Source: Polymyxa betae A26-41 (Eukaryota > Protista > Endomyxa: Phytomyxea). Taken from it: a stretch of DNA of 62,608 nt. The stretch is taken from contig RBZT01000508.1 of the NCBI GenBank assembly GCA_003693705.1, positions 1 through 62,608 of the forward strand. Direction: 5' to 3'. The translations under genes and the position numbers were made by a program. How positions within the stretch are numbered: position 1 is the stretch's first letter; every line of letters starts with the position of its first letter. This document shows positions 4,966 through 59,656 of this stretch, in pieces. A model generated the notes under the pieces. It saw nothing but the letters and a program-made list of their open reading frames with translations, did not search any database and was not told where the DNA came from.

Positions 4966-7900
4966 ATGAGCCGATCCAAAGGGCCAACGAAAGCGGTCCC
5001 GCCCATCCCTACGAAGGCGCCATGTCCGGCATCAGCACCACAGTCTCGATCTGCACAAGATGTGACCAACGAAATCGCTGTCCGAAACTGGATTGAATCG
5101 ATGACAATGATGAAGCTGAACAATGACGATATCTGTTTGGCGTTGCGATCCGGAATCGAATTGTGCATGTTATTGAACCGAATCCAGCCTGACCTTATCA
5201 AGAAAATCAACCGGGTTAACCAGCCATTCCTGGAACTTGAGAATATTGGCAAGTAGGTCACAGCATTGTTTGTTGGTAGAAACTCGAACATCGAAATAGA
5301 TTTGTTCTTGGAGCGCGAGCCCTGGGTGTTCCGAAATCCGACGTAAACCGCCCTGTTTGTATTGTGTTTGTCGATTTGACTATGATGGGAATCGCAGGTG
5401 ATCCAAGCTGCCGATCTTTGTGACGCTCTAAATCCAGGTCGAGTGGTTTCCTGCATTATAGCGCTGGCTAGGTGTGCAGAGGTCAAAGCTCCAGATCTTC
5501 CCCGATTAGATCTTAATGGCTCAAAGTTGCAAGCCAACGAGACGTCGAAAAGCGATACTCAGAAACTAAACCAGCGGCTCAGTGTCTCGATTTCCCCGAT
5601 CAGCGCCTCCATGATGGATGCGAATTCCGCTTCGGCATTAGAGTCGCAACTAAAGAGGAGGCAATCTTCGATTATTCTGCAAAGGTTTAGTTCGGCAATG
5701 TGCAGCAGCAGCTTTAACGTTTGACGTCCTGACGTAGAGAAGTTGATCATTTAAAAGAGGAAAAACATCAATTGGAACAAACGAATCAGGAGAGGATCGC
5801 GCAATTCCAGCAACTTCAAGCTGCCGATAAGAATATGATCGGCAAGCTTCAGATCGAGAACCAAACAGCGATGATGGAACTCGACCAAATGCGGACCGCT
5901 TTAAAGAAAGCTGAGATCGATATGGCCATCCAGAAGAAACAGGTATGATGGCGTATTAAAGGGTGGTCATATCATGATGGTTTCAGAACAGGCAGAAGCA
6001 GATCGATTGCAGGCAATGACACAACAACAACGTGCCGTACAAGATGCAACGGAACAGTTAGAACAAAAGCTGACTGCCCAACACCAGCGTGAGCTGGAAC
6101 AGCTCAAAACAGCATCGAAGGTTTTGATCATGCCTGCGGATTATGAAACATCTGATGAAGGATCCAGGCAGCGTTGGATGAACGCAGACGTCAAATTCAA
6201 AAGGAGAGTGAAGAATTAGGTGCCAAACGAGGCAAAAAACTTGAGAATGCTCTGCAGCGTATCACTCAATTGGAGCAAACCGACGACAACAATCATAACG
6301 ACGAAATCGCTCGAATTAAGCAAGAAGCTCGAGTCCAGATAGCCGTTGAAAGCGAGAGGTATTTTGATTTTCGGGGCGCTTTCTGGAATTCTGAATGAAT
6401 ATCTTTAGAATTCGTCTAGAGGCAGATCAAAGAGCTATTGAGCAAGTGCGTTTGCAAGCTGAACGGGCAAAACAAGAGATAACGTCCGTTAGCACAGTTC
6501 TGAGAAAAATTAGTATCACCTGACATGACCAATTAGAGCTCAAGTTACCGAACAATGCCAGTTAGAGCTTGCCAAGATGAAAGGACAGATTGAGACACAT
6601 GTCGTACAGAAGACGACGGCGCTACAAGCGGAAACGAGGCAACGCGAACGAGAATTACGCAAAAGTCTAGAAGTCGAGTTAACTAGTTTAGAATTGCTAG
6701 GTAAATCTAAAATCATGAAGAACAGTTGAAATGCTGAGGTGACGTCTCAGGGAAAACGTTGGAGCAGGAAAGAGCACTTCGCGTGAAATATGAAGAAGAG
6801 CTTCAGCACGTTCGAGACGATCTCGATCGCAAGATCGCAAGCGTTCGCGATGAGCAGGTAAGCACATACCAGCAATTACGGAGAACTGTCAAGTTCATTT
6901 TCGACTAGATGCTACATCAGAGTGAAAAAGAGGCCCAACTTCGAAAAGAATTCGAAGATGAGCTGCAAAGAATGAAAGATGTTCTCGAACAAAAGGTGCG
7001 ATCTGAAGAAAGGTTAAGAGTCGAAGAACGAAGAAAGATCGAGGAGAAGTATAAGACCAAAGTCCAGGAACTCAACCGGAAACATCTAGAACTATTGAAG
7101 GTTGGTCATACTGTCCCTAACCAAACCCCCGTTTAGTCATTCCATTTCGATGCAGAAACAAGCGGATTTAGAAACCGCTTCAGCTGAGGACCGTGCTGGA
7201 TTAGAAGGGACGGTGAAACAAATGGAAGATACCATAAAACAATTAGAAGCAGAAGCCCAGGTTCGATCAGCGGTAGAACAAGAGCGAGACCGCTTTATGG
7301 CAAAGGTGATTGCTTAGAGATAAGCAATGCTAGTTAATGCTGACATCCCACACAAGATTGCAGAATTGGAGAATGAGAAGCGGAATTCCCAGGCGGTCTA
7401 CGAGCAGCGACTCCGGTTGCTGCTATTGATAATCAGTCGCCGCATTTCTGATTTGAATACCAGGGAAGTGACTGAAGAGTTGACGAAGCAGCGAACAGCC
7501 CTGGCTAAGCTACAAGACGAGCTCGACAATAAGCTAAATGATGAACTCGCCATTATAACAGGGCCTGGGGTCGCAGCCAACCGGTAACATAATTTCCAAG
7601 TTGTGTGCTCACCTGGGGTCATTTCACTCTGTTATGAGAGCGCTCTCTGTTTATCATTTGCCAATCATGGCTGTTCTATTCGTTGAGTGTTGAGGTGTCT
7701 TTGGTGTCTGGCATCAGTTCCAAGAGCACTGCAATGACGGCTGATAATATTCTATAGAGAGGCGGAACTGCAAGCGCTCCGTCTGTCGCAAGAGGACACG
7801 TTGAATCAATACAAGGCGGAGATCGATAGACTGAATCGAGGCCTAATACAGGAAAAAGAACATATCGAAAGGCAAATACAGCAGCAGTATGAAGATAAGC

Positions 7901-15590: not shown

Positions 15591-18088
15591 TTACTCCCAT
15601 TCGGTCTGCATAATGTCAATGAAGTATGAGCGGTAAATCTCTAGACTTACAGTTCCAGGTGGCTTTGCTGTTAAATCGTAGCAGACGCGTTCAATATCTG
15701 GAATTTCCGACAGAATTCTTTCAACCATTTGGTTCAGACTAAAGGCAAGTTGAATATCAATAGCCGGAAATTGACTCGGCATAATGGCATTACATGGTTT
15801 CCTGGAAATGTCTTCCGGGTACGGCTGGCACTCCCGTCATGAAGTCATGCGTTACGAACGGACGCAACGTGATACATCGCTTGCCTGCAACGCCGAAATC
15901 CGCTGGAAATAGAATAACAGGGACTTGCGCCAAAACACGATGTAAACTGTTCTCTAACAGAATCTCATTGACACTGTGCATTGAGCATTAGACAAAGGTC
16001 ACGATCAGTGCGGTTGGCAGCTCACATCTTGTCAGCAGCGCGAACCAGAGCAATCTCGTCGGTTCCTAGAAAGGACGGTGTGATTGTCAGCGGTACAGGC
16101 GTGTGTAGATCATCGTTTGAGTTGCGACCGGGGAACAAGAACACGACCCGATTAACAGAGTGAACCTTCTTCGGAATCGAACTTGCAATCGACATCAACT
16201 TCAGCGCGAAATCAGATTTCAACAGCGTTGGCGCCAAATTAATACATTACCTGAATCCAGTTCGGTTTGGAAGAACGAATACCGACACACGACGCATAAG
16301 ATCGACCATCGCCTTGAACCCCAACAGTACGAATAGGAAGAAGATCTGCAGCGATATCTGGATTATAAAGAATAAGATTCGCCTAGAAACCATAACTTGA
16401 TAAAACATACTGTCAGAGTTGAATTGCTTTAGCTGAGCAATAACGGATTCGTGTTGAGGAGATAGATAAGGCTGTGAAGCACAGATGATACGGATAGCTA
16501 AGCCGGGTCCAGGGAATGGCTGGCGCCAGACCTGATGCAACATATCAGCCACAGAACTTGAGGATTTAAGAGACGGCCATTACCAGAGATTCGGAAAGAC
16601 CAAGCTCAACGCCCAAAGCACGAACTTCATCTTTATGGTAGTCCCGTAACGGCTCAACAATACGTCCTAATTCGCGTAAGTGTCGAACAATAGCCGTGTC
16701 GTTATGGTGCGTTTTAATCACGTGAGCGGCTTTTCCGATGCTGGGGCTGAACGACAAACTTGAGAGAGCAAATCAAATAGAATCGGAGCCAAAACGAACC
16801 TTCCGGATTCAATGAGATCGGGACGAAGAGATCCTTGTGCAAGAACACAGGTTGCTGCATCCAAACCGAGACGACGCAATTCTTCGTCGCAGACAGACAT
16901 GAAGCAGTCGCCGATAATCTGACGTTTCAATTCCGGGTCCTGAACCTGGTGAAGAGGCAACGTGCGGACTCCATTCACGACAGTCGTGGAGTGTGCGAAT
17001 CGCTCTCGGGCGTCGATATAATGCAGCTGTAGGCCTAACACCGAGAGCGCTGTCATCACCGATTCGCTTTCTTCATGGCGCATGAATCCCGTATCGATGT
17101 GAATGGCGAAGATCCGCTCGTGAGGAAGAGCTTTGCTGAGCAGGGCGCAGACGACCGTGGAATCGACGCCACCGCTGGCCAGCACCAGCACAGAGGCGGT
17201 GGGACCCACCGCTTTCTGTATATACTCGATAGCCGACAGCTGACGGCATTGGGGCGTGTACGTCTGGCGACAGCCGCAGACATCAACCAAGAAGTTCTTC
17301 AGCATGGTCACACCGTTCTCGGTCAAGTTGACCTCCGCTGAATCATTAGAATTTAGAAAGCGTTGGTGGGAACGTAGCAAGGACCAGTACGATGGAACTG
17401 AACGCCATACAATGGCAGAGATTTGTGGGCGATTCCGACAACAATATCGGAATGATCGGATGAGCGAGCCGTCACGTCATATTCTGGGCTTAACATGCCG
17501 ATGCTATCACCATGTGTGAGAAGAACTGGAGTTGGAGTGTCGATATCTTTCCACATAGGGGAAGATTCTGTAAATCACAATTAACTGTGCTCTTGATAAG
17601 CAGCAATCTACGAGACCTAAATCGATGTCAAAAACGCCATCTTCGCGCGTAGTCTTCCGTTCCATGGATCCACCAGCAGCAACATTGAGTAGCTGCATTC
17701 CTGATTCAGACCAATCAGCAAGGAAATATGGGTAAGATGTGAAAGGCACATGCCATAACAAATGCCCAGTACAGGTTTCGTCTTCAGGATGTCTAAATCG
17801 AAAGCAGCAGCGAGATCGGGATTGTCAGCCAGGCTGTTTGGACCGCCTGAGATAATCACTCCTTTATAACGTTTATCGGCAATGGCAGAAGCTCTTGTTT
17901 CAAATGGCATAATCTCTGTCGATGCATTAGCTAAGAAAGTGGACCACATTCAGAAATTTACCAGAGCGAATGTTCAGTTCGCGAACGCGTCTGTCTATAA
18001 CCTTGCAGTATTGGGCGCCCGCATCCAAAATAACAACGATATCCTCATCATCGTGAACAGGCAACAGATCAGCGACAGGAACGCCCAT
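15591..18088 (-). CDS. GUA1: GMP synthase (glutamine-hydrolysing)
   Basis: [57 protein letters not shown] and KPPGT-TEWE*. Confidence 0.95.
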
Positions 18089-24278: not shown

Positions 24279-27200
24279 ATGGGTGGCTGGAAAAAGGAGT
24301 TCCAAAGCATTTTGAGCCGGCTGAAGCGTGAGCCTGGATATGTCTACTTTAAAGTGGCAGTCGATCCAGTTGGGCTGCATATTCCCCTTTATCCATATCT
24401 CATAAAATGCCCAATGGATTTGGGTACCGTCGAGGTATGATGCTCTGCGAACATTTAAGTGTTTGGATTGGAAGAAAGGCATTATTCAGCATATTCGTCC
24501 CCTTTTTATTCAACGTCTACAACCGACGCATGTAATATTTTAGGCAAAACTATCTTCAGGTGCATATGAATCGCAAGCTCCAGCCGCAGTTGATGTTTTG
24601 ACCTGTTTCAACAACGCTTTATTATTCAATGGCCCATCTTCTACTGGCTCCGATGTTTACAAATCAGCCAAGTCAATGCGAGGGACTTTCGCTAAATTGC
24701 ATCGTTCAAAATTTGGCTCGGATCCGCCTTACACTGGATTCCACGTTTCTGCACCAGACCCTCTTCCTGAAGAAGAACGTGTTGAATTGACGAAACCGAA
24801 CGTCGCGATTTTGATGGATATGCTAGATAGGCTTAAGAAGAAGTACAAGAAGGCCCTTGAGCCTTTTATTTTCTGTGTCGATCCGGAGCGATATCCGGAT
24901 TACTATAAAAGAGTCCCGAATCCCATCGCTCTGTCTGTTGTTGAGGTCAGGGGAGTCAATCTCTCGATTTTGTTCGGTTCTCTGACATTTTTTTAAGCTG
25001 AAAGGCTGATCCTCTGGTTACTTCTTTTTGGTTATCTGGTTTGCGTGAAGAGTCACTCTTTGCTTGGCGTGAACAATCACTCTTTGATGCGATTCACTGT
25101 TTTATATGCTACATAATTCTCACTCGTTTATTATTTCGCTGTCTTTTTTCACTCGCATCAATGGAGCTTGTGGTTAATGGGCCCCAATCTAATCATTGCT
25201 TTAGGCCAAACTTGAGCTTCATGGATACGAGATGTTTGGGCATTTTGCAGCAGAAATTCGGCGGATTTGGAGCAACTGTCAACTATACAACGGACAGGAT
25301 AAACTCTCAAGGCAGGCAGGAAAGATAGCTGCAAAATTCGAGAAATACCTCGGCAAAGCTTTGGACGATATGCGGTCTATTGTTGTGATTGATGATGGTC
25401 CTGCTAAGAAGGCGGCAGCAATGGTCGTTCTCCCTGTTTCATTGGCATCTAGCACTCTCGTCGACCCACAGGTTGTTCCAAAAGCTGAATCTCCACTAGC
25501 ACCATCGGCAGCTAAGCCTAATTCCGGTCTCCCCGCTAGTATTGAACCCGAAAAGCTTCCAGCTCCACCTCAGGTAGGCTGTTGCTTCTGATCTGAATCG
25601 CAATACTCATTTCGTTTAGAAAGCTAAACGGGATCAGTCGATTACACTAAAATTGGCTCTTTCATCGCGACCTCCGTTCAATAAAGCCGCTTGTCTCGAC
25701 ATAATCAACAAGCTCATCAAAGACAAACGCTCCCAATTGTTTCGAGATCCTGTCCCCGACTCAGTTCCCGGCTATCGCGATGTTATTGATCGACCGATGG
25801 ATCTGAAAACAGTTCGGGTATTCTAGCTGATTTACCCTGATGTGAGAGGCTTACCGTTTGTAGGGGAATATTCAAGCAGGGCGCTATGAAAGCAATGATG
25901 ATTTCGTAGCAGATGTGGCTCAGATTTGGGAAAACTGTCGCACTTTCAATGGACACTCCCCCATTACTGATATAGCCAATGTTCTCGCTACGAAATTCGA
26001 GCGAGATCTACTTCCATTACTTGATGCTGAGTATCCGCCTGTTTCTCAGGCGTCAAAACTTTCAGCACCACCCCCGAAACCAAAACAGCCCAAAGTTCAG
26101 CCGCCCAAAGTTCAGCCTCAGCCAGTTGTTGTCGAAGAACCAGTTCCAGTGAAAGTGGAACCTACACCTCCTCCTGCTTATTCTGGTCCCATTCTGCCTT
26201 CAATTCCTATTCTGCCCACTGCAGCTGATGCTTCACTAATATGTATTCCCTCTCAGCCAATGACCAGGACCTCTTCTCGTCTTTGCTCGACGATTCTGCG
26301 TTCTGTTATCTCAGTCGACATGTCTGGGGATTTTATGGATCCCCTTGACCCTGATATGTATAATTATGTCGGATATGACGAGTACGTTAAAAAGCGGATG
26401 GACTTGAAAACGGTCAGAAGGAATCTGGACACAGATCGCTATCCTACACCAAACGATTTTTTTGCCGATCTCAATTTGGTGTTTCTCAATGCCCTCACAT
26501 ACCCTGGCACTCCATTGCTTACCAAAATTGCTGCCAGGTATCTGTACTTACATGCTGAAACCGGATTTCTAGAGGCTTTTCCTGGAGCCAATTCCAAGCA
26601 AAACCTCAAACAACCGTGGGTCCAAGCTGCTAGGACTGCTCTGAATGAAGTCAACGCTTATGATTTCGGAAGGCTGTTTGCCGAACCAGTAAATCCCATC
26701 GTATTCAATCTTCTTGAATACTACGATCGTATTGAGAAGCCACGAGATCTCATAACTGTTACAAGGCGTCTTAATGCTGGTATTTACAGTACAGCTAGCG
26801 AGTTCCTTGCGGAAGTTGACCTGATTTGGTCCAATTGCATGCTCTATCATGGTGACACGAATCCTGATCTTACCGATGTTGCTGTTAACTGTCGAACTGT
26901 CTTTTTGGAATCGTTTGATCGCGCTCTTTCTGGTGTTTCAACGTCGGAATCTACTTCAACAGAACTGACATCCCTTCCTCCTGTCACTGGGGAATCAACT
27001 CTTCCGCCTCCCAAAGCCCCTGCAAAGCGACCGGTGCCCACACCTGCTGTCCATCTAATTCGGCGTCTCAAGAAGATGGATACTCAACAGGTATTCCACT
27101 TTCCTGTGGACCAAGCTCTCTATCCCGAATATAAAAATTTCGTTGAGAAGCCGATGGATTTGGGGACCATTGAAGCGAAATTATTGGAAGGTGGCTATTT

Positions 27201-34500: not shown

Positions 34501-37500
34501 CGAATGGGCCATAATCTGTTCAAGCAATTCATCCGCCTTTTTCAGCTCTAAACAATGTTAAACAAGCCAGACAAATTCCTCATATACCGACCTAGATTTG
34601 CCTGCTGCGATTTGCGGCTGGCTTGTTCGAGCTTCGATACAAGCGTTACGTCATCAACAATGTTGCTGACTGATCCCGATTCGTTCAGATGCTGCAGTAT
34701 TTCTCGCTCTGACAAAGCCAAACTAAGCCGAGTCTGTTCGGCTTTCGAATGCAGTGTGAGTCGTTGCGAATGCAATTCAGGTGTCAAGACTTCCTGTAAA
34801 CGGAGTGAGAGATGATTTCTAGAATTTCTTGTTGCCGGTAAAAACATAAAACCGACCTGAATTAAGTGCAAAACTTGATCGGAGAGCGTGTCCTGCGTTA
34901 CAGAGAAATGAACAAATGTTACTCGTGAGCACAGATCTAAGCAAGCCCCTCAGATCAGATAGTGACAGATTAGAGCAACCGACCTGGAGTGAAGCGGGCC
35001 TTCATGTCGCGAGTCACCATGATCAGATGGAATTTGGGTGACACGTCAACATCGCGATCAACGACACGGACCACAGTGCGACCATCAAGACGAATAAATT
35101 CGCGATTTAACACCGGATTTAAAATCGGATCGATATCCTACCAGATGTCAGCACATGACTCGAATGAAACGACGAAAAATGAGAACATATAACTTAAAAA
35201 AAGAGAAACAAGAAAGAAGTCAAATATCGAGTTAAGACAGTGTTCTCTCGCACCTCAACATCTTCAATCAGTAAAACAGTTCCGAATCGCAAACACGAAG
35301 TAAGCGTTTTCAAGAACATGGGACTAGACAGCCGAGTTCGAGTAAGCTGTGGGTATCTAGTTATGAGATGAAAATCCGGGGTAGAATATAATCTTTGATA
35401 GGGTTTACCTGGCTTGAATAAATGCAGCTGCTTGATTTGCTGGATCGATTAGTAGCGGATATCGAGGGCTCTGCTCCAGAAGCACAGCATTGCTGAGGGC
35501 GTTGTTTCCAACAGGAAGACCCAGCAGAGACCATCGAACGTGATCGTCGGCGGAGCTCATCACCTGAAACATAGAATAAGAAAACAGCCAAGATGACACA
35601 AATATGTAGAAGCGACAAAGGTTGCAGGGTCGGTAAAATGGGTTCAATGCATTTAGAGCTGAACACAGATGGAAATGCAGATCCACCTGTGAGAAGTTCA
35701 GTTCGGTTCGTGCTGAAAGAAGGCAATTTTGGTGCCAGAGTTGAGCGAGCTGATCGCGATTGTGCTCGTCGAAATAACCAGCATAGACCAGAAACGCCGA
35801 GCTCAATACGGAATCGCCAAGAATGGATTCGAACGCGTCGGCAGCTGCCAGAGATGACGCTTCCCATCGAGCGCGTTCCGATGATAATCCAGCCACTACA
35901 CCGAAACAAGTTAAGCAACAAGTTTGAATCTTGACAAATCACGAAACATAAACGCTTTTGGAATTTAAACAGAGGACGTGCCGATTTTCAACGAGCGATC
36001 GCATCCCGATTCGACAGATTCAATTTCTGATTTCAAGGACTGAATTGAGGCCACCATCTCGGCATAACGCTGCTTTATAACGGCGATGTGTTGTTCGATT
36101 TCATGCAATGACGCGCACAGCTGTGAATGTTTCTCCTCCAGTTCGTTGCTGTCGTTCAAAAGCAGCTCCAGCTAGGTAGAATAAGCAACCGGTTAATGAT
36201 GGCTGCGGGTGACGAATACCTGAGAGCGCATCGGGGCAACCGCTTGCAAGACATCGCTGTATTCGATCTGGGATTTCACCCAAGAAACCAGCGGCCCGCA
36301 TGCCACGCTGGCATGATTTACAGTCTGTATCAAAATTAGTTGGCAGCGGAAAACGACAATAGACAAACTTCGAATGTAAACTCTGGATTGACCATATAGT
36401 CAAGTTTGATCGCCATGCGAACACCCGGCGTGACATTTTCTGGGTCGAACTGGTCCAAATTCAGTATTACGAGATTAATACTAATAACAACCAGGCTGAC
36501 ATTCACGATCGAGCTGATAAAATCGGCACGACGCAGAACGCGCCGGACTTCAGTCCACGATTTGCAGGAGACTCCCAACAGCAGCAAGGTGGGCTCCAGG
36601 GCGAGCTTGACAGCCGCAGGTGGATTACTATCAATTGTGAATATCCGCAATGCATACCAATCGCAATGCCTTTACCTGAACCCGCGGATTTCGTCCAGCG
36701 ACGCCTTCCGAATCGATTGAACGGCGCTTCTCGCCTCATCTAGCTTTGGTTGGATCGCATCCAGATCGTCCTGTCCGTCAAGTTAAAACTTTGAGAAGGC
36801 ACATCAAGCTGGTATGACCCGAATGATGCGTTGGCGCTCTGAGATCTCAGCACGACGCTCGTTGAGCTGAGCTTCAACGGCAAGCGTTTCGTCACGTTTC
36901 TTCTCGGCCATCGACTGCTCTTTGAGCACATCTTCCAGTGTCGTGTTTGCCACTTTTATTTGCTGTGAACAAACATGAGAAGCGAAAAAAACGTTTGCCG
37001 ATTATCCCACCCGATCGAGCGTTTGGCGAACCGCAATTAAATCATCCTGCATATTTCTAACGTCAACTTCAGTGGAACGTAATTTTTCGAGACCAGAACG
37101 GCGATGCCCTTGTTCTGTGTGTAAAATAGTATGTCAGCGACGGTTTGGAGACGCCTTGTTCGTGCTTATACCATAGTCAAGGGTATTGCGACATTCTTGA
37201 ACGACTTTAATGAATGTATGGAGAAGGTCGACATAATGGCGAGGAGTGACGTAACAGCATCTCTGAATGCGATTCAGGCGATGATCATCGCTGAATTTAA
37301 CTGTGGATCGATGACACGAAACTAGCGACTTCTACGCCAAAACGTTAATCTTCGGGAAACTGGATCACAAACAGTTAATTTCCAACCGCGACTGAAACGA
37401 TCGAGTCATCGTCCTCATTGAATATGCCCGCTTCATGAAGTAACTCGATAGCGATTTGATGTAAGGCATCATCGGACCAATCCCCTGTTTCACAGGACAG

Positions 37501-52903: not shown

Positions 52904-53255
52904 TGAACCAGCTTAAAGATGATGGAAATCAGAACGCAACGACGAAGATGTTGAATCAAAGACGGAAAGCCTTTTACAGGTGTGAAGAAAGACGCCGAGA
53001 TTCAGATCTGCACACGAGCATTGGGACGGAAATCTTGCAACCGACTCCAAATGGCTAAATATCAAATGTCAATGCCTGCTTAAAACGTGTCATATAATTG
53101 TTAAGAAGTTGGGAGTTGGTTAGTGTGATCATGACACTCGGGATTAATCTCATCCTCGCACATCGAACTCCATTATAGCATCATTTCTGACCCTGAACTT
53201 CCGAACCAGACATCCAATCGCTATTTGATTACAGACTCTAATCTCGACCTGCACA

Positions 53256-53816
53256 ATGGCGATTCGTATATCGACCGTGGCCATGGTTGTCTTCCTGGCC
53301 TTAGCTGTGGGATTCTGTGCAGGCGGCAGGAAGTTCAAGACCTACTATGAGGTTCTAAACATCACGAGATCGGCGTCGACCAGGGATGTCAAGCTGGCGT
53401 ACTACAAAGTCTCGCGAATCAATCATCCAGATCGAAACAATAAGAGTAATGCTGATCGACGAATGGCTGAGGTGAATCGGGCCTATGAAGTCTTAAAGAA
53501 TGTTAACCAGAGAGCTGCCTACGATCTGTATTTGACCATGAATGGAAATGCTCACCATCCTGATTGGGATAAGAATGGAAGTTTCTCACAATGGCAGACC
53601 TTGATGAATATGTTGTATCTCAGCGATTATCATTGGTTCTGGCAGATCACCATCGTTCTGCTGCTGCTAGGAGTCGGATCCGCTCTTCTGGGCGCCGTTC
53701 TCACTCTAATCACACCCATTATGAAATTTGCCAGTTCTTGGACGTTCTGGATCATGCTTGGCATTTCCCTGTTTAACCAGGGATCGACATGGATGTATGG
53801 CGGCAAGAAGAAATAA
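53256..53816 (+). CDS. ER-type DnaJ protein (signal peptide, J domain, C-terminal TM segments)
   Basis: YYEVL, HPD, EVNRAYEVL and RAAYD; N-terminal hydrophobic signal. Confidence 0.9.
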   Translation: MAIRISTVAMVVFLALAVGFCAGGRKFKTYYEVLNITRSASTRDVKLAYYKVSRINHPDRNNKSNADRRMAEVNRAYEVLKNVNQRAAYDLYLTMNGNAHHPDWDKNGSFSQWQTLMNMLYLSDYHWFWQITIVLLLLGVGSALLGAVLTLITPIMKFASSWTFWIMLGISLFNQGSTWMYGGKKK

Positions 53817-58772: not shown

Positions 58773-59053
58773 ATCATGGCTTTTAATATGACCTCTCATG
58801 ATATAATTCAATCAAGCAGTACGATAAAATGGATCGTCATTGTCAATATCATGATCTCGCAGCAATGTTTTAATAATGGGGTGCTCGTAACAATGTGAGC
58901 AAATGTCCAGATCATAAATACATAAGTTTATTCAGCGATGATTTGCCCATCGTGTAACCTTCAAAAGCTTAATGCCTTTCACAGTGCTCATCGATGTCAT
59001 GGATATGGTCGTCCAGAAATGTGCACAGCATAGGCAAATAGCAGAGAGATAAA

Positions 59054-59531
59054 TCAAGAGGAGAGGTCATGAACGAGGGATTGGTCGATGTAGGGTAGAC
59101 TGCAAGATAATTGATGAAATGATACAGGAGACTTGATATCATCATAATCAGGCCAATGAATAGGTTCTGATTCCAATACAATATCTTTAATCCAATAAGG
59201 ATCATTTGTATGAGATCTGGGCTGCCAGACTACTCCAACTGCAGGGAGAGACAAGTACTGCAGACTTGTCAGATATGGTCTGACATCCCAGATCTTCTTG
59301 ATCGTCGGCCAGGAACTCGCTTGTGATAGATTCATCGCATGAACATTTGGGCTGGGATTGGGCCAGGCTTCGGCGTAAGAGCTCGTTCTCTTCTTCTAGG
59401 GCTGTGATTCGTTGTTGAAGAAACAGGAACATCTCCCGCTTCCGGATCCGTGACCGCAGAGCCGCTTCCTTGTTGCTACGCTTACGTCGCTCCAACGGCG
59501 AAGATGATAATGTCAGCCCACTCGCTACCAT
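59054..59531 (-). CDS. bZIP transcription factor, HAC1/XBP1/bZIP60-like (109 aa unspliced, stop at 59202; 152 aa spliced, stop at 59054)
   Basis: Basic region RRKRSNKEAALRSRIRK with a leucine zipper; KSAVL at the IRE1-type splice site; twin CTGCAG hairpins. Confidence 0.8.
59213..59295 (-). other. IRE1-type bifurcated stem-loop with a predicted 19-nt non-spliceosomal intron (59242-59260)
   Basis: Hairpin gacaagu[CUGCAGU]acuuguc; hairpin cucc[CUGCAGUU]ggag; basal stem agaucugggaugucagac / gucuggcagcccagaucu (17/18 paired). Confidence 0.8.
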
Positions 59532-59646: not shown

Positions 59647-59656
59647 TGACACGTCA
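59647..59656. promoter_or_regulatory. TGACACGTCA, a Hac1/UPRE-like element upstream of the bZIP gene
   Basis: ~115 bp upstream of the bZIP ATG; contains GACACGT. Confidence 0.35.

What the first reader, a model, noticed from the sequence alone, without database searches (positions are those of the whole stretch)
59054..59531. IRE1-type unconventional splicing cassette in a protist bZIP: a hidden HAC1/XBP1/bZIP60 equivalent with a 19-nt intron
Seen in sequence: on the minus strand, just after the bZIP, two CUGCAG loops lie exactly 19 nt apart. One caps a perfect 7-bp stem (gacaagu/acuuguc) and the other a 4-bp stem (cucc/ggag). Both sit on an 18-nt basal stem with 17 positions paired (59278-59295 with 59213-59230). 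The protein reads KSAVL at the first loop. Established: IRE1 cuts CNG|CNG loops in such bifurcated stem-loops in XBP1, HAC1 and bZIP60, whose proteins read ESAAL/ESAVL at this site; Candida albicans HAC1 has a 19-nt intron. Inference: removing 59242-59260 shifts the frame. The short tail (VLVSPCSWSSLAAQISYK*) becomes an acidic/aromatic activation-like tail (AVGVVWQ...EPIHWPDYDDIK...DLSS*), extending the protein from 109 to 152 aa. Standard GT-AG gene finders would miss this. It would place an IRE1-bZIP unfolded-protein-response arm in a lineage where I am not aware of it being characterised.
Basis: partly seen in the sequence, partly recalled or inferred. Interest (0 to 1): 0.92.

Follow-up and report, generated by a model that had tools for sequence, protein, structure and literature searches.

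The report
Predicted IRE1-spliced bZIP mRNA, Polymyxa
A small bZIP transcription-factor gene of the plant-root parasite Polymyxa betae carries the twin-hairpin RNA signature that the ER-stress sensor IRE1 cuts in yeast HAC1, animal XBP1 and plant bZIP60. This rhizarian protist therefore very probably uses the same cytoplasmic splicing switch, although no RNA data could be checked.

Summary
On the minus strand, just after a bZIP domain, two hairpins with CUGCAG loops sit on a 17/18-bp basal stem. This is the minimum-free-energy fold (z -3.1). Cuts after G59261 and G59242 would remove 19 nt. That moves translation from a frame that stops after 18 more codons into one open for 61 codons with an acidic/aromatic tail (109 -> 152 aa).

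Independent support:
- Rfam RF04247 (Hac1/Xbp1 non-canonical intron) matches over its full length at 33.2 bits, E 2.4e-4, below its gathering score of 41.
- The genome is the Polymyxa betae draft. It encodes IRE1 (kinase + KEN RNase) and RtcB.
- The Plasmodiophora brassicae orthologue has the same cassette with a 23-nt intron. The 4-nt difference lies inside the predicted intron, so the spliced junction (S-A-V-G) is the same.
- All 8 codons across hairpin 1 are identical between the genera, against 13/27 in the bZIP block.
- Each species' basal stem pairs with its own partner strand.
- A metagenomic relative has an overlapping 131-aa ORF in exactly the predicted frame.

Verdict: a new member of a known kind, apparently the first in Rhizaria. 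Confidence is about 0.8.

The parts
59202..59531 (-). Unspliced ORF: ATG at 59531, 109 aa, stop at 59204-59202. It encodes a bZIP plus a short tail (…DKSAVLVSPCSWSSLAAQISYK*).
59343..59492 (-). Basic-region leucine-zipper domain.
   Evidence: Pfam bZIP_1 2e-9 and bZIP_2 3.8e-9. Whole-genome bZIP_1 hit at C539:59343-59492.
59278..59295 (-). 5' strand of the basal stem (AGAUCUGGGAUGUCAGAC).
59250..59270 (-). Hairpin 1: 7-bp stem and 7-nt loop CUGCAGU (59263-59257). The predicted IRE1 cut is after G59261.
   Evidence: The sequence is identical in P. brassicae.
59242..59260 (-). Predicted 19-nt unconventional intron (CAGUACUUGUCUCUCCCUG). It has no GU-AG ends.
   Evidence: The 4-nt indel relative to P. 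brassicae lies inside it.
59233..59248 (-). Hairpin 2: 4-bp stem and 8-nt loop CUGCAGUU (59244-59237). The predicted IRE1 cut is after G59242.
   Evidence: Arabidopsis bZIP60 also has an 8-nt second loop (PMC3216516).
59213..59230 (-). 3' strand of the basal stem (GUCUGGCAGCCCAGAUCU).
59054..59241 (-). Predicted exon 2. It supplies CA of the junction Ala codon, then 61 codons in the shifted frame (VGVVWQPRSH…EPIHWPDYDDIK…DLSS) and the stop at 59056-59054. The tail is net acidic (9 D/E against 3 K/R) and rich in aromatic and hydrophobic residues.
59647..59656 (-). TGACGTGTCA about 116 nt upstream of the ATG. It resembles a UPRE/ACGT-core bZIP site and could be an autoregulatory element. This is tentative.
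   Evidence: The motif is not enriched genome-wide: 27 copies against 29 for the control pattern.

Best explanation
The gene encodes the Polymyxa betae counterpart of HAC1/XBP1/bZIP60, a bZIP transcription factor whose mRNA is switched on by IRE1.

The unspliced mRNA encodes a 109-aa bZIP with a short tail. Under ER stress, the IRE1 KEN RNase is proposed to cut after the G at loop position 3 in each of two CUG|CAG loops, that is after G59261 and after G59242. The long basal stem (17 bp here, about 29 bp in P. brassicae) would hold the two exons together. RtcB, the only matching ligase type found in the genome, would join them.

Loss of 19 nt shifts the frame. The bZIP then gains a 61-aa acidic/aromatic C-terminal tail, presumably a transactivation domain, giving a 152-aa active factor that induces ER-folding genes and perhaps itself.

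Shown: the structure, the motif, the frames, its conservation, and the presence of IRE1 and RtcB. Inferred: cleavage, ligation, stress dependence, and the activity of the new tail.
For: 1. The anatomy is exactly as described, and it is the MFE and centroid fold. All six conserved CxGxxG nucleotides are present in both loops.

2. Rfam RF04247, 'bZIP non canonical Hac1/Xbp1 intron', matches 59224-59284(-) over the full model (1-72) at 33.2 bits, E 2.4e-4. Scaled to the 27-Mb genome for this one family, I estimate E of about 0.002.
   - The P. brassicae orthologue scores 33.9 bits.
   - None of the other five bZIP loci of the genome match.
   - The only other match the whole-genome scan listed is 24.3 bits and is not in a bZIP.

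3. The machinery is present.
   - IRE1 has kinase and KEN domains: Pfam Ribonuc_2-5A 5e-35, and a 6e-20 match to human IRE1 with the RNKKxHY Asn and His retained.
   - RtcB is present at 1.6e-82.
   - No Trl1 CPD domain was found.

4. The cassette is conserved in Plasmodiophora brassicae (L004).
   - Hairpin 1 is identical. Hairpin 2 is ccucc[CUGCAGUC]ggagg. The predicted intron is 23 nt.
   - The canonical twin fold is within 0.2 kcal/mol of the MFE. The region folds with z -5.1.

5. The 4-nt indel between the genera lies inside the predicted intron.
   - The unspliced reading frames therefore differ after it.
   - The spliced junction reads S-A-V-G in both.
   - The shifted frame stays open for 61 and 60 codons.

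6. There is RNA-level constraint. All 8 of 8 codons across S-D-K-S-A-V-L-V are identical between the genera, against 13 of 27 for identical residues in the bZIP block (Fisher p 0.009).

7. The basal stems co-vary. Each species' own flanks pair at -29.6 and -30.8 kcal/mol. Cross-species combinations reach only -14.4 and -17.2.

8. A third relative, P0081 from an ENA metagenome, reads …DKSAALVPSPLQS….
   - If it uses the same CUGCAG codons this implies a 23-nt intron.
   - Its contigs carry an overlapping 131-aa ORF at frame offset +2, exactly the frame a 23-nt excision would give.

9. Spliceosomal introns in this genome are GT-AG and about 50 nt long, as in the IRE1 gene itself. The 19-nt element is not of that type.
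Against:
- The Rfam score is below the family's gathering score (33.2 against 41 bits).
- The two predicted spliced tails show no detectable sequence similarity. BLASTP finds nothing, and the global alignment has z -0.95. Their reality rests on ORF length and composition. The chance of an ORF that long is about 0.035 for P. betae and 0.125 for P. brassicae by my own composition estimate.
- The protein collection holds no protein corresponding to a spliced P. brassicae isoform. Both members of that cluster are the unspliced 162-aa form.
- Only two DNA orthologues exist, so formal covariation statistics are not possible.
- The second loop has 8 nt, not the canonical 7. Arabidopsis bZIP60 has the same feature (PMC3216516).
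- The IRE1 kinase reads HKD and DMG in place of HRD and DFG.
Confidence: 0.8

Rival explanations
1. The twin-hairpin element is a conserved, functional RNA structure, but it is not a splice cassette. IRE1 or another factor uses it for cleavage and decay (RIDD-like), translational pausing or mRNA localisation. The 109-aa protein would then be the only product.
For: - The predicted exon-2 tails of the two genera show no sequence similarity.
- No spliced-form protein is present in the protein collection.
- There are no RNA data.
Against: - Two complete CUG|CAG sites sit on a closing stem, which is the geometry needed for excision and ligation rather than for a single cut.
- In three taxa the frame reached by excision is open for 61, 60 and at least 131 codons, while the unspliced frame ends within about 30 codons.
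- The 4-nt indel sits inside the predicted intron and leaves the junction S-A-V-G intact.
- RtcB is present.
Confidence: 0.1
2. The conserved element is a peptide motif (DKSAVLV) of the bZIP protein. The RNA fold is a by-product of a palindromic coding sequence.
For: The peptide DKSA(V/A)LV is conserved in all three relatives.
Against: - All 8 codons are identical at synonymous sites, although genomic GC differs (45% against 58.5%). In the bZIP block only 13 of 27 are identical.
- The non-conserved flanks still form a long stem in each species, using different sequences.
- The second loop is conserved as RNA (CUGCAG) although it is read in different frames in the two species: P-C-S against L-Q.
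- An Rfam structure model detects the site.
Confidence: 0.05
3. The resemblance is due to chance: an ordinary bZIP gene with an accidental pair of CUGCAG hairpins.
For: - Loosely defined twin CNGCNG hairpins occur about 0.075 times per 62-kb window by chance, roughly 30 per genome. One other such pair is in this window at 16033-16094(+).
- The Rfam score is below the gathering score.
Against: - It lies just 3' of one of only about 6 bZIP domains in 27 Mb.
- It has a 17-bp closing stem, and the frameshift leads into an open frame.
- The Rfam E-value is 2.4e-4.
- The element is conserved in another genus with co-varying flanks.
Confidence: 0.03

Closest known systems
Plant bZIP60 / OsbZIP50 mRNA (IRE1A/B substrate)
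   Same: - The bZIP domain is followed by twin stem-loops with CxGxxG loops on a flanking stem.
- The intron is 23 nt in dicots, as in P. brassicae and as inferred for P0081.
- The second loop has 8 nt instead of 7 in Arabidopsis.
- Excision causes a frameshift.
(PMC3216516; PMC11077094.)
   Different: - In bZIP60 the unspliced frame encodes a longer tail with a transmembrane domain, which splicing replaces by a shorter one. Here the unspliced tail is short (18 aa after the junction Ala) with no TMD, and splicing lengthens the protein.
- The intron is 19 nt in P. betae.
- Plants ligate with a Trl1-type tRNA ligase (my own knowledge). Here only RtcB was found.
- The bZIP domain has no specific sequence affinity to plant proteins. 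Its best hits are a mix of chytrid, diatom and plant bZIPs.
Metazoan XBP1 mRNA
   Same: - The intron is short (26 nt) and lies in twin 7-nt-loop hairpins.
- The frameshift lengthens the protein and adds a C-terminal activation domain (PMC3216516).
- The ligase is RtcB (my own knowledge; the review PMC13247085 was listed).
- The loops lie in the same codon phase as in P. brassicae, so the peptides look alike: human …SAAL…PLQQ (from memory) against SAVLVCPSLQS.
   Different: - The intron length differs.
- XBP1u carries a hydrophobic region and a translational pause that target it to the ER. Nothing comparable is evident in the 18-aa unspliced tail here.
- The basal stem is much longer in the phytomyxids.
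Fungal HAC1/hacA mRNA
   Same: - IRE1-dependent excision occurs at twin loops.
- Introns are 20-23 nt in filamentous ascomycetes.
- The C. albicans intron is short and causes a frameshift into a different C-terminus (PMC13703316).
   Different: - Fungi ligate with Trl1 (PMC13703316). No Trl1 CPD domain was found here.
- S. cerevisiae has a long intron that blocks translation by pairing with the 5' UTR.
Rfam RF04247 (bZIP non-canonical Hac1/Xbp1 intron)
   Same: The alignment covers the full model (positions 1-72). It includes both hairpins, both CUGCAG loops and the outer stem.
   Different: The scores are 33.2 and 33.9 bits against a gathering score of 41. Matches below a family's gathering score are not counted as members, so these sequences would not be in the family's curated hits.

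Membership tests
IRE1-dependent unconventionally spliced bZIP mRNAs (HAC1/XBP1/bZIP60) | The mRNA encodes a bZIP transcription factor, and the site lies 3' of the bZIP domain. | tested here: met
   Pfam bZIP_1 2e-9 over residues 15-64. The site starts at residue 88.
IRE1-dependent unconventionally spliced bZIP mRNAs (HAC1/XBP1/bZIP60) | Two adjacent stem-loops each carry CxGxxG in the loop and are flanked by a closing stem (definition in PMC11077094). | tested here: met
   Loops are CUGCAGU (7 nt) and CUGCAGUU (8 nt, as in Arabidopsis bZIP60) on a 17/18-bp stem. This is the MFE and centroid fold.
IRE1-dependent unconventionally spliced bZIP mRNAs (HAC1/XBP1/bZIP60) | Excision changes the reading frame or replaces the C-terminus. 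| tested here: met
   The intron is 19 nt (23 nt in P. brassicae). The shifted frame is open for 61 (60) codons, while the unspliced frame stops after 18 (28) more codons.
IRE1-dependent unconventionally spliced bZIP mRNAs (HAC1/XBP1/bZIP60) | The RNA motif is conserved in orthologues beyond what the protein requires. | tested here: met
   The P. brassicae cassette is present. Synonymous codons are identical in 8 of 8 against 13 of 27. The flanks co-vary. Only two DNA sequences are available, so no formal covariation statistic could be made.
IRE1-dependent unconventionally spliced bZIP mRNAs (HAC1/XBP1/bZIP60) | The genome encodes IRE1 with a kinase and a KEN RNase domain. | tested here: met
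   The gene lies within G000:C667:13000-22000 (L008; KEN domain at C667:19224-19631). Pkinase 7e-10, Ribonuc_2-5A 5e-35, and human IRE1 KEN 6e-20 with the RNase Asn and His retained. The kinase has HKD and DMG variants.
IRE1-dependent unconventionally spliced bZIP mRNAs (HAC1/XBP1/bZIP60) | An RNA ligase able to join the exons is present (RtcB or Trl1). | tested here: met
   RtcB lies at G000:C968:81459-82813, 1.6e-82. No Trl1 CPD domain was found.
IRE1-dependent unconventionally spliced bZIP mRNAs (HAC1/XBP1/bZIP60) | The intron is removed in vivo on ER stress, in an IRE1-dependent way. | not testable with these tools
No spliced-form protein is in the protein collection.
IRE1-dependent unconventionally spliced bZIP mRNAs (HAC1/XBP1/bZIP60) | The spliced product activates UPR target genes. 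| not testable with these tools
   Only hints are available. The tail is acidic and aromatic. TGACGTG-type sites lie upstream of the gene itself and of calreticulin, and the motif is not enriched genome-wide.
Rfam RF04247 | The score reaches the curated gathering threshold (41 bits). | tested here: not met
   The scores are 33.2 bits (window) and 33.9 bits (P. brassicae). The alignments are full-length with E 2e-4. These are significant matches, but below the curators' cut-off.

The most novel reading that the evidence does not exclude
This is a genuine IRE1-bZIP splicing switch in Phytomyxea (Rhizaria). As far as my literature searches show, it would be the first identified outside animals, fungi and green plants/algae. 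It would place the twin-loop cassette in the SAR supergroup and support its presence in the last eukaryotic common ancestor.

It has a twist. Between two genera the intron changed by 4 nt (23 against 19). This flips which frame the unspliced mRNA reads and leaves the spliced product's junction untouched. That is a natural experiment suggesting that only the spliced frame is under selection.

A less likely variant is acquisition from a plant host, since the 8-nt second loop and the 23-nt intron look like bZIP60.
Probability: 0.7. Interest if true: 0.65.

Novelty: new member of a known kind. Interest (0 to 1): 0.6.

Why it matters
The IRE1 branch is regarded as the oldest arm of the unfolded-protein response. 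Its transcription-factor substrate, however, has been pinned down only in opisthokonts and green plants/algae. In Dictyostelium, for example, it is still unidentified (PMC6025073). Several parasite lineages lack IRE1 altogether (my own knowledge).

A recognisable HAC1/XBP1/bZIP60-type cassette in plasmodiophorids would do three things:
- It would extend the mechanism to Rhizaria and support an origin before the split of the major supergroups.
- It would correct the gene models of P. betae and P. brassicae. The P. brassicae gene is annotated only as the unspliced 162-aa protein.
- It would give a simple RT-PCR read-out of ER stress in obligate biotrophic plant parasites (the clubroot pathogen and the rhizomania vector), which are hard to study.

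The 19- versus 23-nt pair also shows how such introns can change length without harming the spliced product.

Tried and rejected
- More orthologues by protein search:
  - Three word-indexed searches found only P. brassicae P0001/P0002 and the metagenomic P0081.
  - The exhaustive HMMER profile search gave 282 bZIP hits. Among the 150 best listed, only P0001 and P0081 carried the SA[AV]…LQ signature.
- More orthologues by DNA: the protein-pattern scan and the hairpin-pattern scan of JGI metagenome contigs both found nothing (one search failed as busy).
- DNA for P0081 was not retrievable because the sample files are too large.
- Stramenopile check: contigs of the best-scoring bZIP hits, two of them from diatoms (L015-L018), have no RF04247-like element. 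This is uninformative, because they are transcript-like contigs or unrelated bZIPs.
- Similarity of the two spliced tails: none was found.
- P. brassicae strain polymorphism, to test the frame under selection: the three loci are identical.
- UPRE idea: TGACGTGTCA is not enriched genome-wide, 27 copies against 29 for the control. The 8-mers are at chance level in the window. One TGACGTG lies upstream of calreticulin and none near ERO1 or the calnexin-like gene.
- Whole-genome RF04247 scan: it scored only 74 of 1822 candidates and did not list the window's own site, so it cannot prove uniqueness.
- Spliceosomal intron: rejected. The element has no GU-AG ends, is only 19 nt long, and the genome's introns are about 50 nt with GT-AG ends.
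- Literature: six full-text searches found no report of this switch in Plasmodiophora, Polymyxa, Rhizaria or other SAR protists. Hooks & Griffiths-Jones 2011 was not held. One search was wasted on a badly chosen phrase.
- The exons were handled separately by reference.

Full report
**Observation.** The element was read on the minus strand.
- Hairpin 1 is gacaagu[CUGCAGU]acuuguc at 59270-59250: a 7-bp stem and a 7-nt loop.
- Hairpin 2 is cucc[CUGCAGUU]ggag at 59248-59233: a 4-bp stem and an 8-nt loop.
- The closing stem pairs 59295-59278 with 59230-59213 at 17 of 18 positions.

RNAfold of window:59200-59310:- returns exactly this bifurcated structure as both MFE and centroid: -40 kcal/mol, z -3.1, with no shuffle folding as well. 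In a 291-nt context the same structure is kept in both the MFE and the centroid.

The ORF 59531-59202 is a bZIP (Pfam bZIP_1 2e-9). It ends 18 codons after the Ala codon that spans the first predicted cut. The frame reached by deleting 59242-59260 is open for 61 codons down to 59054.

**Chance.** My own scanner looked for twin CNGCNG hairpins with stems of at least 4 bp, loops of 7-8 nt, and spacing of 12-60 nt.
- It finds this site and one weak other pair at 16033-16094(+).
- Shuffled windows give 0.075 per window.
- About 30 such pairs are therefore expected per 27-Mb genome, so the hairpins alone prove nothing.

The context is what counts. The genome has only about 6 detectable bZIP domains, and this element sits directly 3' of one of them.

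**Independent RNA model.** Rfam 15 holds RF04247, 'bZIP non canonical Hac1/Xbp1 intron'.
- It matches 59224-59284(-) over model positions 1-72 at 33.2 bits, E 2.4e-4 for that search. Scaled to the whole genome for this single family, I estimate about 0.002.
- The score is below the curated gathering score of 41.
- The other five bZIP loci of the genome give no match.
- A whole-genome scan listed only a 24.3-bit match outside any bZIP. That scan scored just 74 of 1822 candidates and missed the window's own site, so it is not exhaustive.

**Organism and machinery.** G000 has 27,085,814 bases in 1001 contigs, and the window's GC is 45.7%. The Polymyxa betae draft is described as 1,001 contigs, 27,085,946 bp and 45.1% GC (PMC6328671). 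The only close protein homologue is from Plasmodiophora brassicae. The genome is therefore P. betae (Plasmodiophorida, Phytomyxea, Rhizaria).

It encodes an IRE1 gene split by GT-AG introns (L008 = G000:C667:13000-22000).
- It has luminal-like exons, a kinase (Pfam Pkinase 7e-10) and a KEN RNase (Ribonuc_2-5A 5e-35).
- The KEN domain aligns to human IRE1 at 6e-20, with RNKKNHY keeping the RNase Asn and His.

RtcB is present. No Trl1 CPD domain was detected.

**Comparative evidence.** The P. brassicae orthologue (P0001, annotated as 162 aa; locus L004) has the same cassette.
- Hairpin 1 is identical, hairpin 2 is ccucc[CUGCAGUC]ggagg, and RF04247 scores 33.9 bits.
- The canonical twin fold is within 0.2 kcal/mol of the MFE, inside a basal stem of about 29 bp. 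The region folds with z -5.1.
- Its predicted intron is 23 nt.

Three further points argue for splicing rather than a mere peptide motif.
1. The 4-nt indel between the genera lies inside the predicted intron. After it, the unspliced frames differ: P-C-S-W… in P. betae against C-P-S-L-Q… in P. brassicae. The spliced junction reads S-A-V-G in both, and the shifted frames stay open for 61 and 60 codons.
2. All 8 codons of S-D-K-S-A-V-L-V are identical, although genomic GC is 45% against 58.5%. Only 13 of 27 identical residues in the bZIP block share a codon (Fisher p 0.009).
3. The flanks that form the basal stem differ in sequence, yet each pairs with its own partner (-29.6 and -30.8 kcal/mol) far better than with the other species' partner (-14.4 and -17.2).

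A third relative is P0081, 119 aa, found only in ENA metagenome assemblies.
- It reads …DKSAALVPSPLQS….
- Its contigs carry an overlapping 131-aa ORF at offset +2. That is the frame a 23-nt excision would produce.
- No DNA was available, so its loops are inferred from the peptide.

**Weak points.**
- No RNA data could be consulted.
- The two spliced tails have no detectable similarity. They share only length and an acidic, hydrophobic composition: 9 D/E against 2-3 K/R.
- No spliced-form protein exists in the 15-billion-protein collection.
- With two DNA sequences, covariation cannot be tested formally.
- No further relatives were found in any protein or metagenome search. The best-scoring other bZIPs, two of them from diatoms, lack the element.

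**Mechanism proposed.**
1. On ER stress, IRE1 oligomerises. Its KEN RNase cuts after the G at loop position 3 in each loop, that is after G59261 and after G59242.
2. The long basal stem keeps the exons together.
3. RtcB ligates them.
4. The 19-nt loss shifts translation into the 61-codon frame, giving a 152-aa bZIP with an acidic/aromatic tail that acts as an activation domain.

The unspliced 109-aa form may be inactive or inhibitory. A TGACGTGTCA about 116 nt upstream of the ATG (59647-59656) could allow autoregulation. The motif is not enriched genome-wide, so this is only a hint. All steps after 'structure present' are inferred.

**Comparison with known systems.** The element meets the published definition: CxGxxG loops in two adjacent stem-loops flanked by a stem (PMC11077094).
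- It resembles plant bZIP60 in the 8-nt second loop and, in P. brassicae, the 23-nt intron (PMC3216516).
- It resembles XBP1 in that splicing lengthens the protein and RtcB is the available ligase.
- It resembles short-intron fungal HAC1/hacA (PMC13703316).
- It differs from bZIP60 and XBP1u in having no hydrophobic segment in the unspliced tail. Its basal stem is also unusually long.

By sequence, the bZIP domain has no special affinity to any of these. The top HMMER hits are chytrid, diatom and plant bZIPs.

**Novelty.** Six full-text searches found no report of an IRE1-bZIP switch in Plasmodiophora, Polymyxa, Rhizaria or other SAR protists. A cross-eukaryote survey of the pathway does not mention protists (PMC4891664). 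The Dictyostelium review states that its factor is still unidentified (PMC6025073). I file this as a new member of a known kind.

Noticed in passing
L008 (G000:C667:13000-22000), about 5330-5400 and 5640-5660: The IRE1 kinase reads H-K-D-I-K-P-A-N and A-D-M-G where IRE1 proteins normally have HRD and DFG. The HK|D junction is split by a GT-AG intron of about 50 nt. The catalytic Asp and Asn are kept, so nucleotide binding may be intact.
   Followed up: partly
L008:6228-6725: The KEN-domain open frame carries a 17-aa insertion (vfmlllatsihndiilq) relative to human IRE1. It is probably a short in-frame intron read through.
   Followed up: no
ENA assemblies ERZ23498364 and ERZ27279858 (protein P0081; no DNA retrievable): An uncultured relative encodes a 119-aa bZIP with …DKSAALVPSPLQS…. 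An overlapping 131-aa ORF lies in the +2 frame. It looks like a third carrier of the cassette, from an unknown organism.
   Followed up: partly
window 59647-59656(-), 53085-53092(+), 35039-35048(-); G000:C811:26908: ACGTGTCA/TGACGTG-type sites lie upstream of three genes:
- TGACGTGTCA about 116 nt upstream of the bZIP ATG.
- ACGTGTCA about 170 nt upstream of a signal-peptide J-domain protein (53256-53816).
- TGACGTG about 370 nt upstream of calreticulin.

Counts are at chance level in the window, and the 10-mer is not enriched genome-wide (27 copies against 29 for the control).
   Followed up: partly
G000:C596:73565-73627 (L007:1501-1563): This is the only other RF04247 match listed in the genome scan, at 24.3 bits and E 0.41. 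It has one CUGCAG and one CGGCAG loop in a GC-rich stretch and is not next to a bZIP. It is probably noise.
   Followed up: partly
window 16033-16094 (+): A second loosely defined twin hairpin (CAGCAG and CAGCGG loops, 4-bp stems, 55 nt apart). It is at the level expected by chance.
   Followed up: no
window 58969-59205 (-): A third-frame ORF of 78 aa is hydrophobic at its start and overlaps predicted exon 2. It cannot be reached by removing 19 nt, and no role is evident.
   Followed up: no
G000:C811:24490-24594 and 25403-26538: A weak bZIP_1 match (22.7 bits, in a 310-aa open frame) lies directly next to the calreticulin gene on the same strand.
   Followed up: no
L004:3352-3459: The basal stem closing the twin hairpins in P. 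brassicae is about 29 bp long, far longer than the 12 bp of the Rfam consensus. The P. betae stem has 17 bp. Long exon-holding stems may be a phytomyxid feature.
   Followed up: partly
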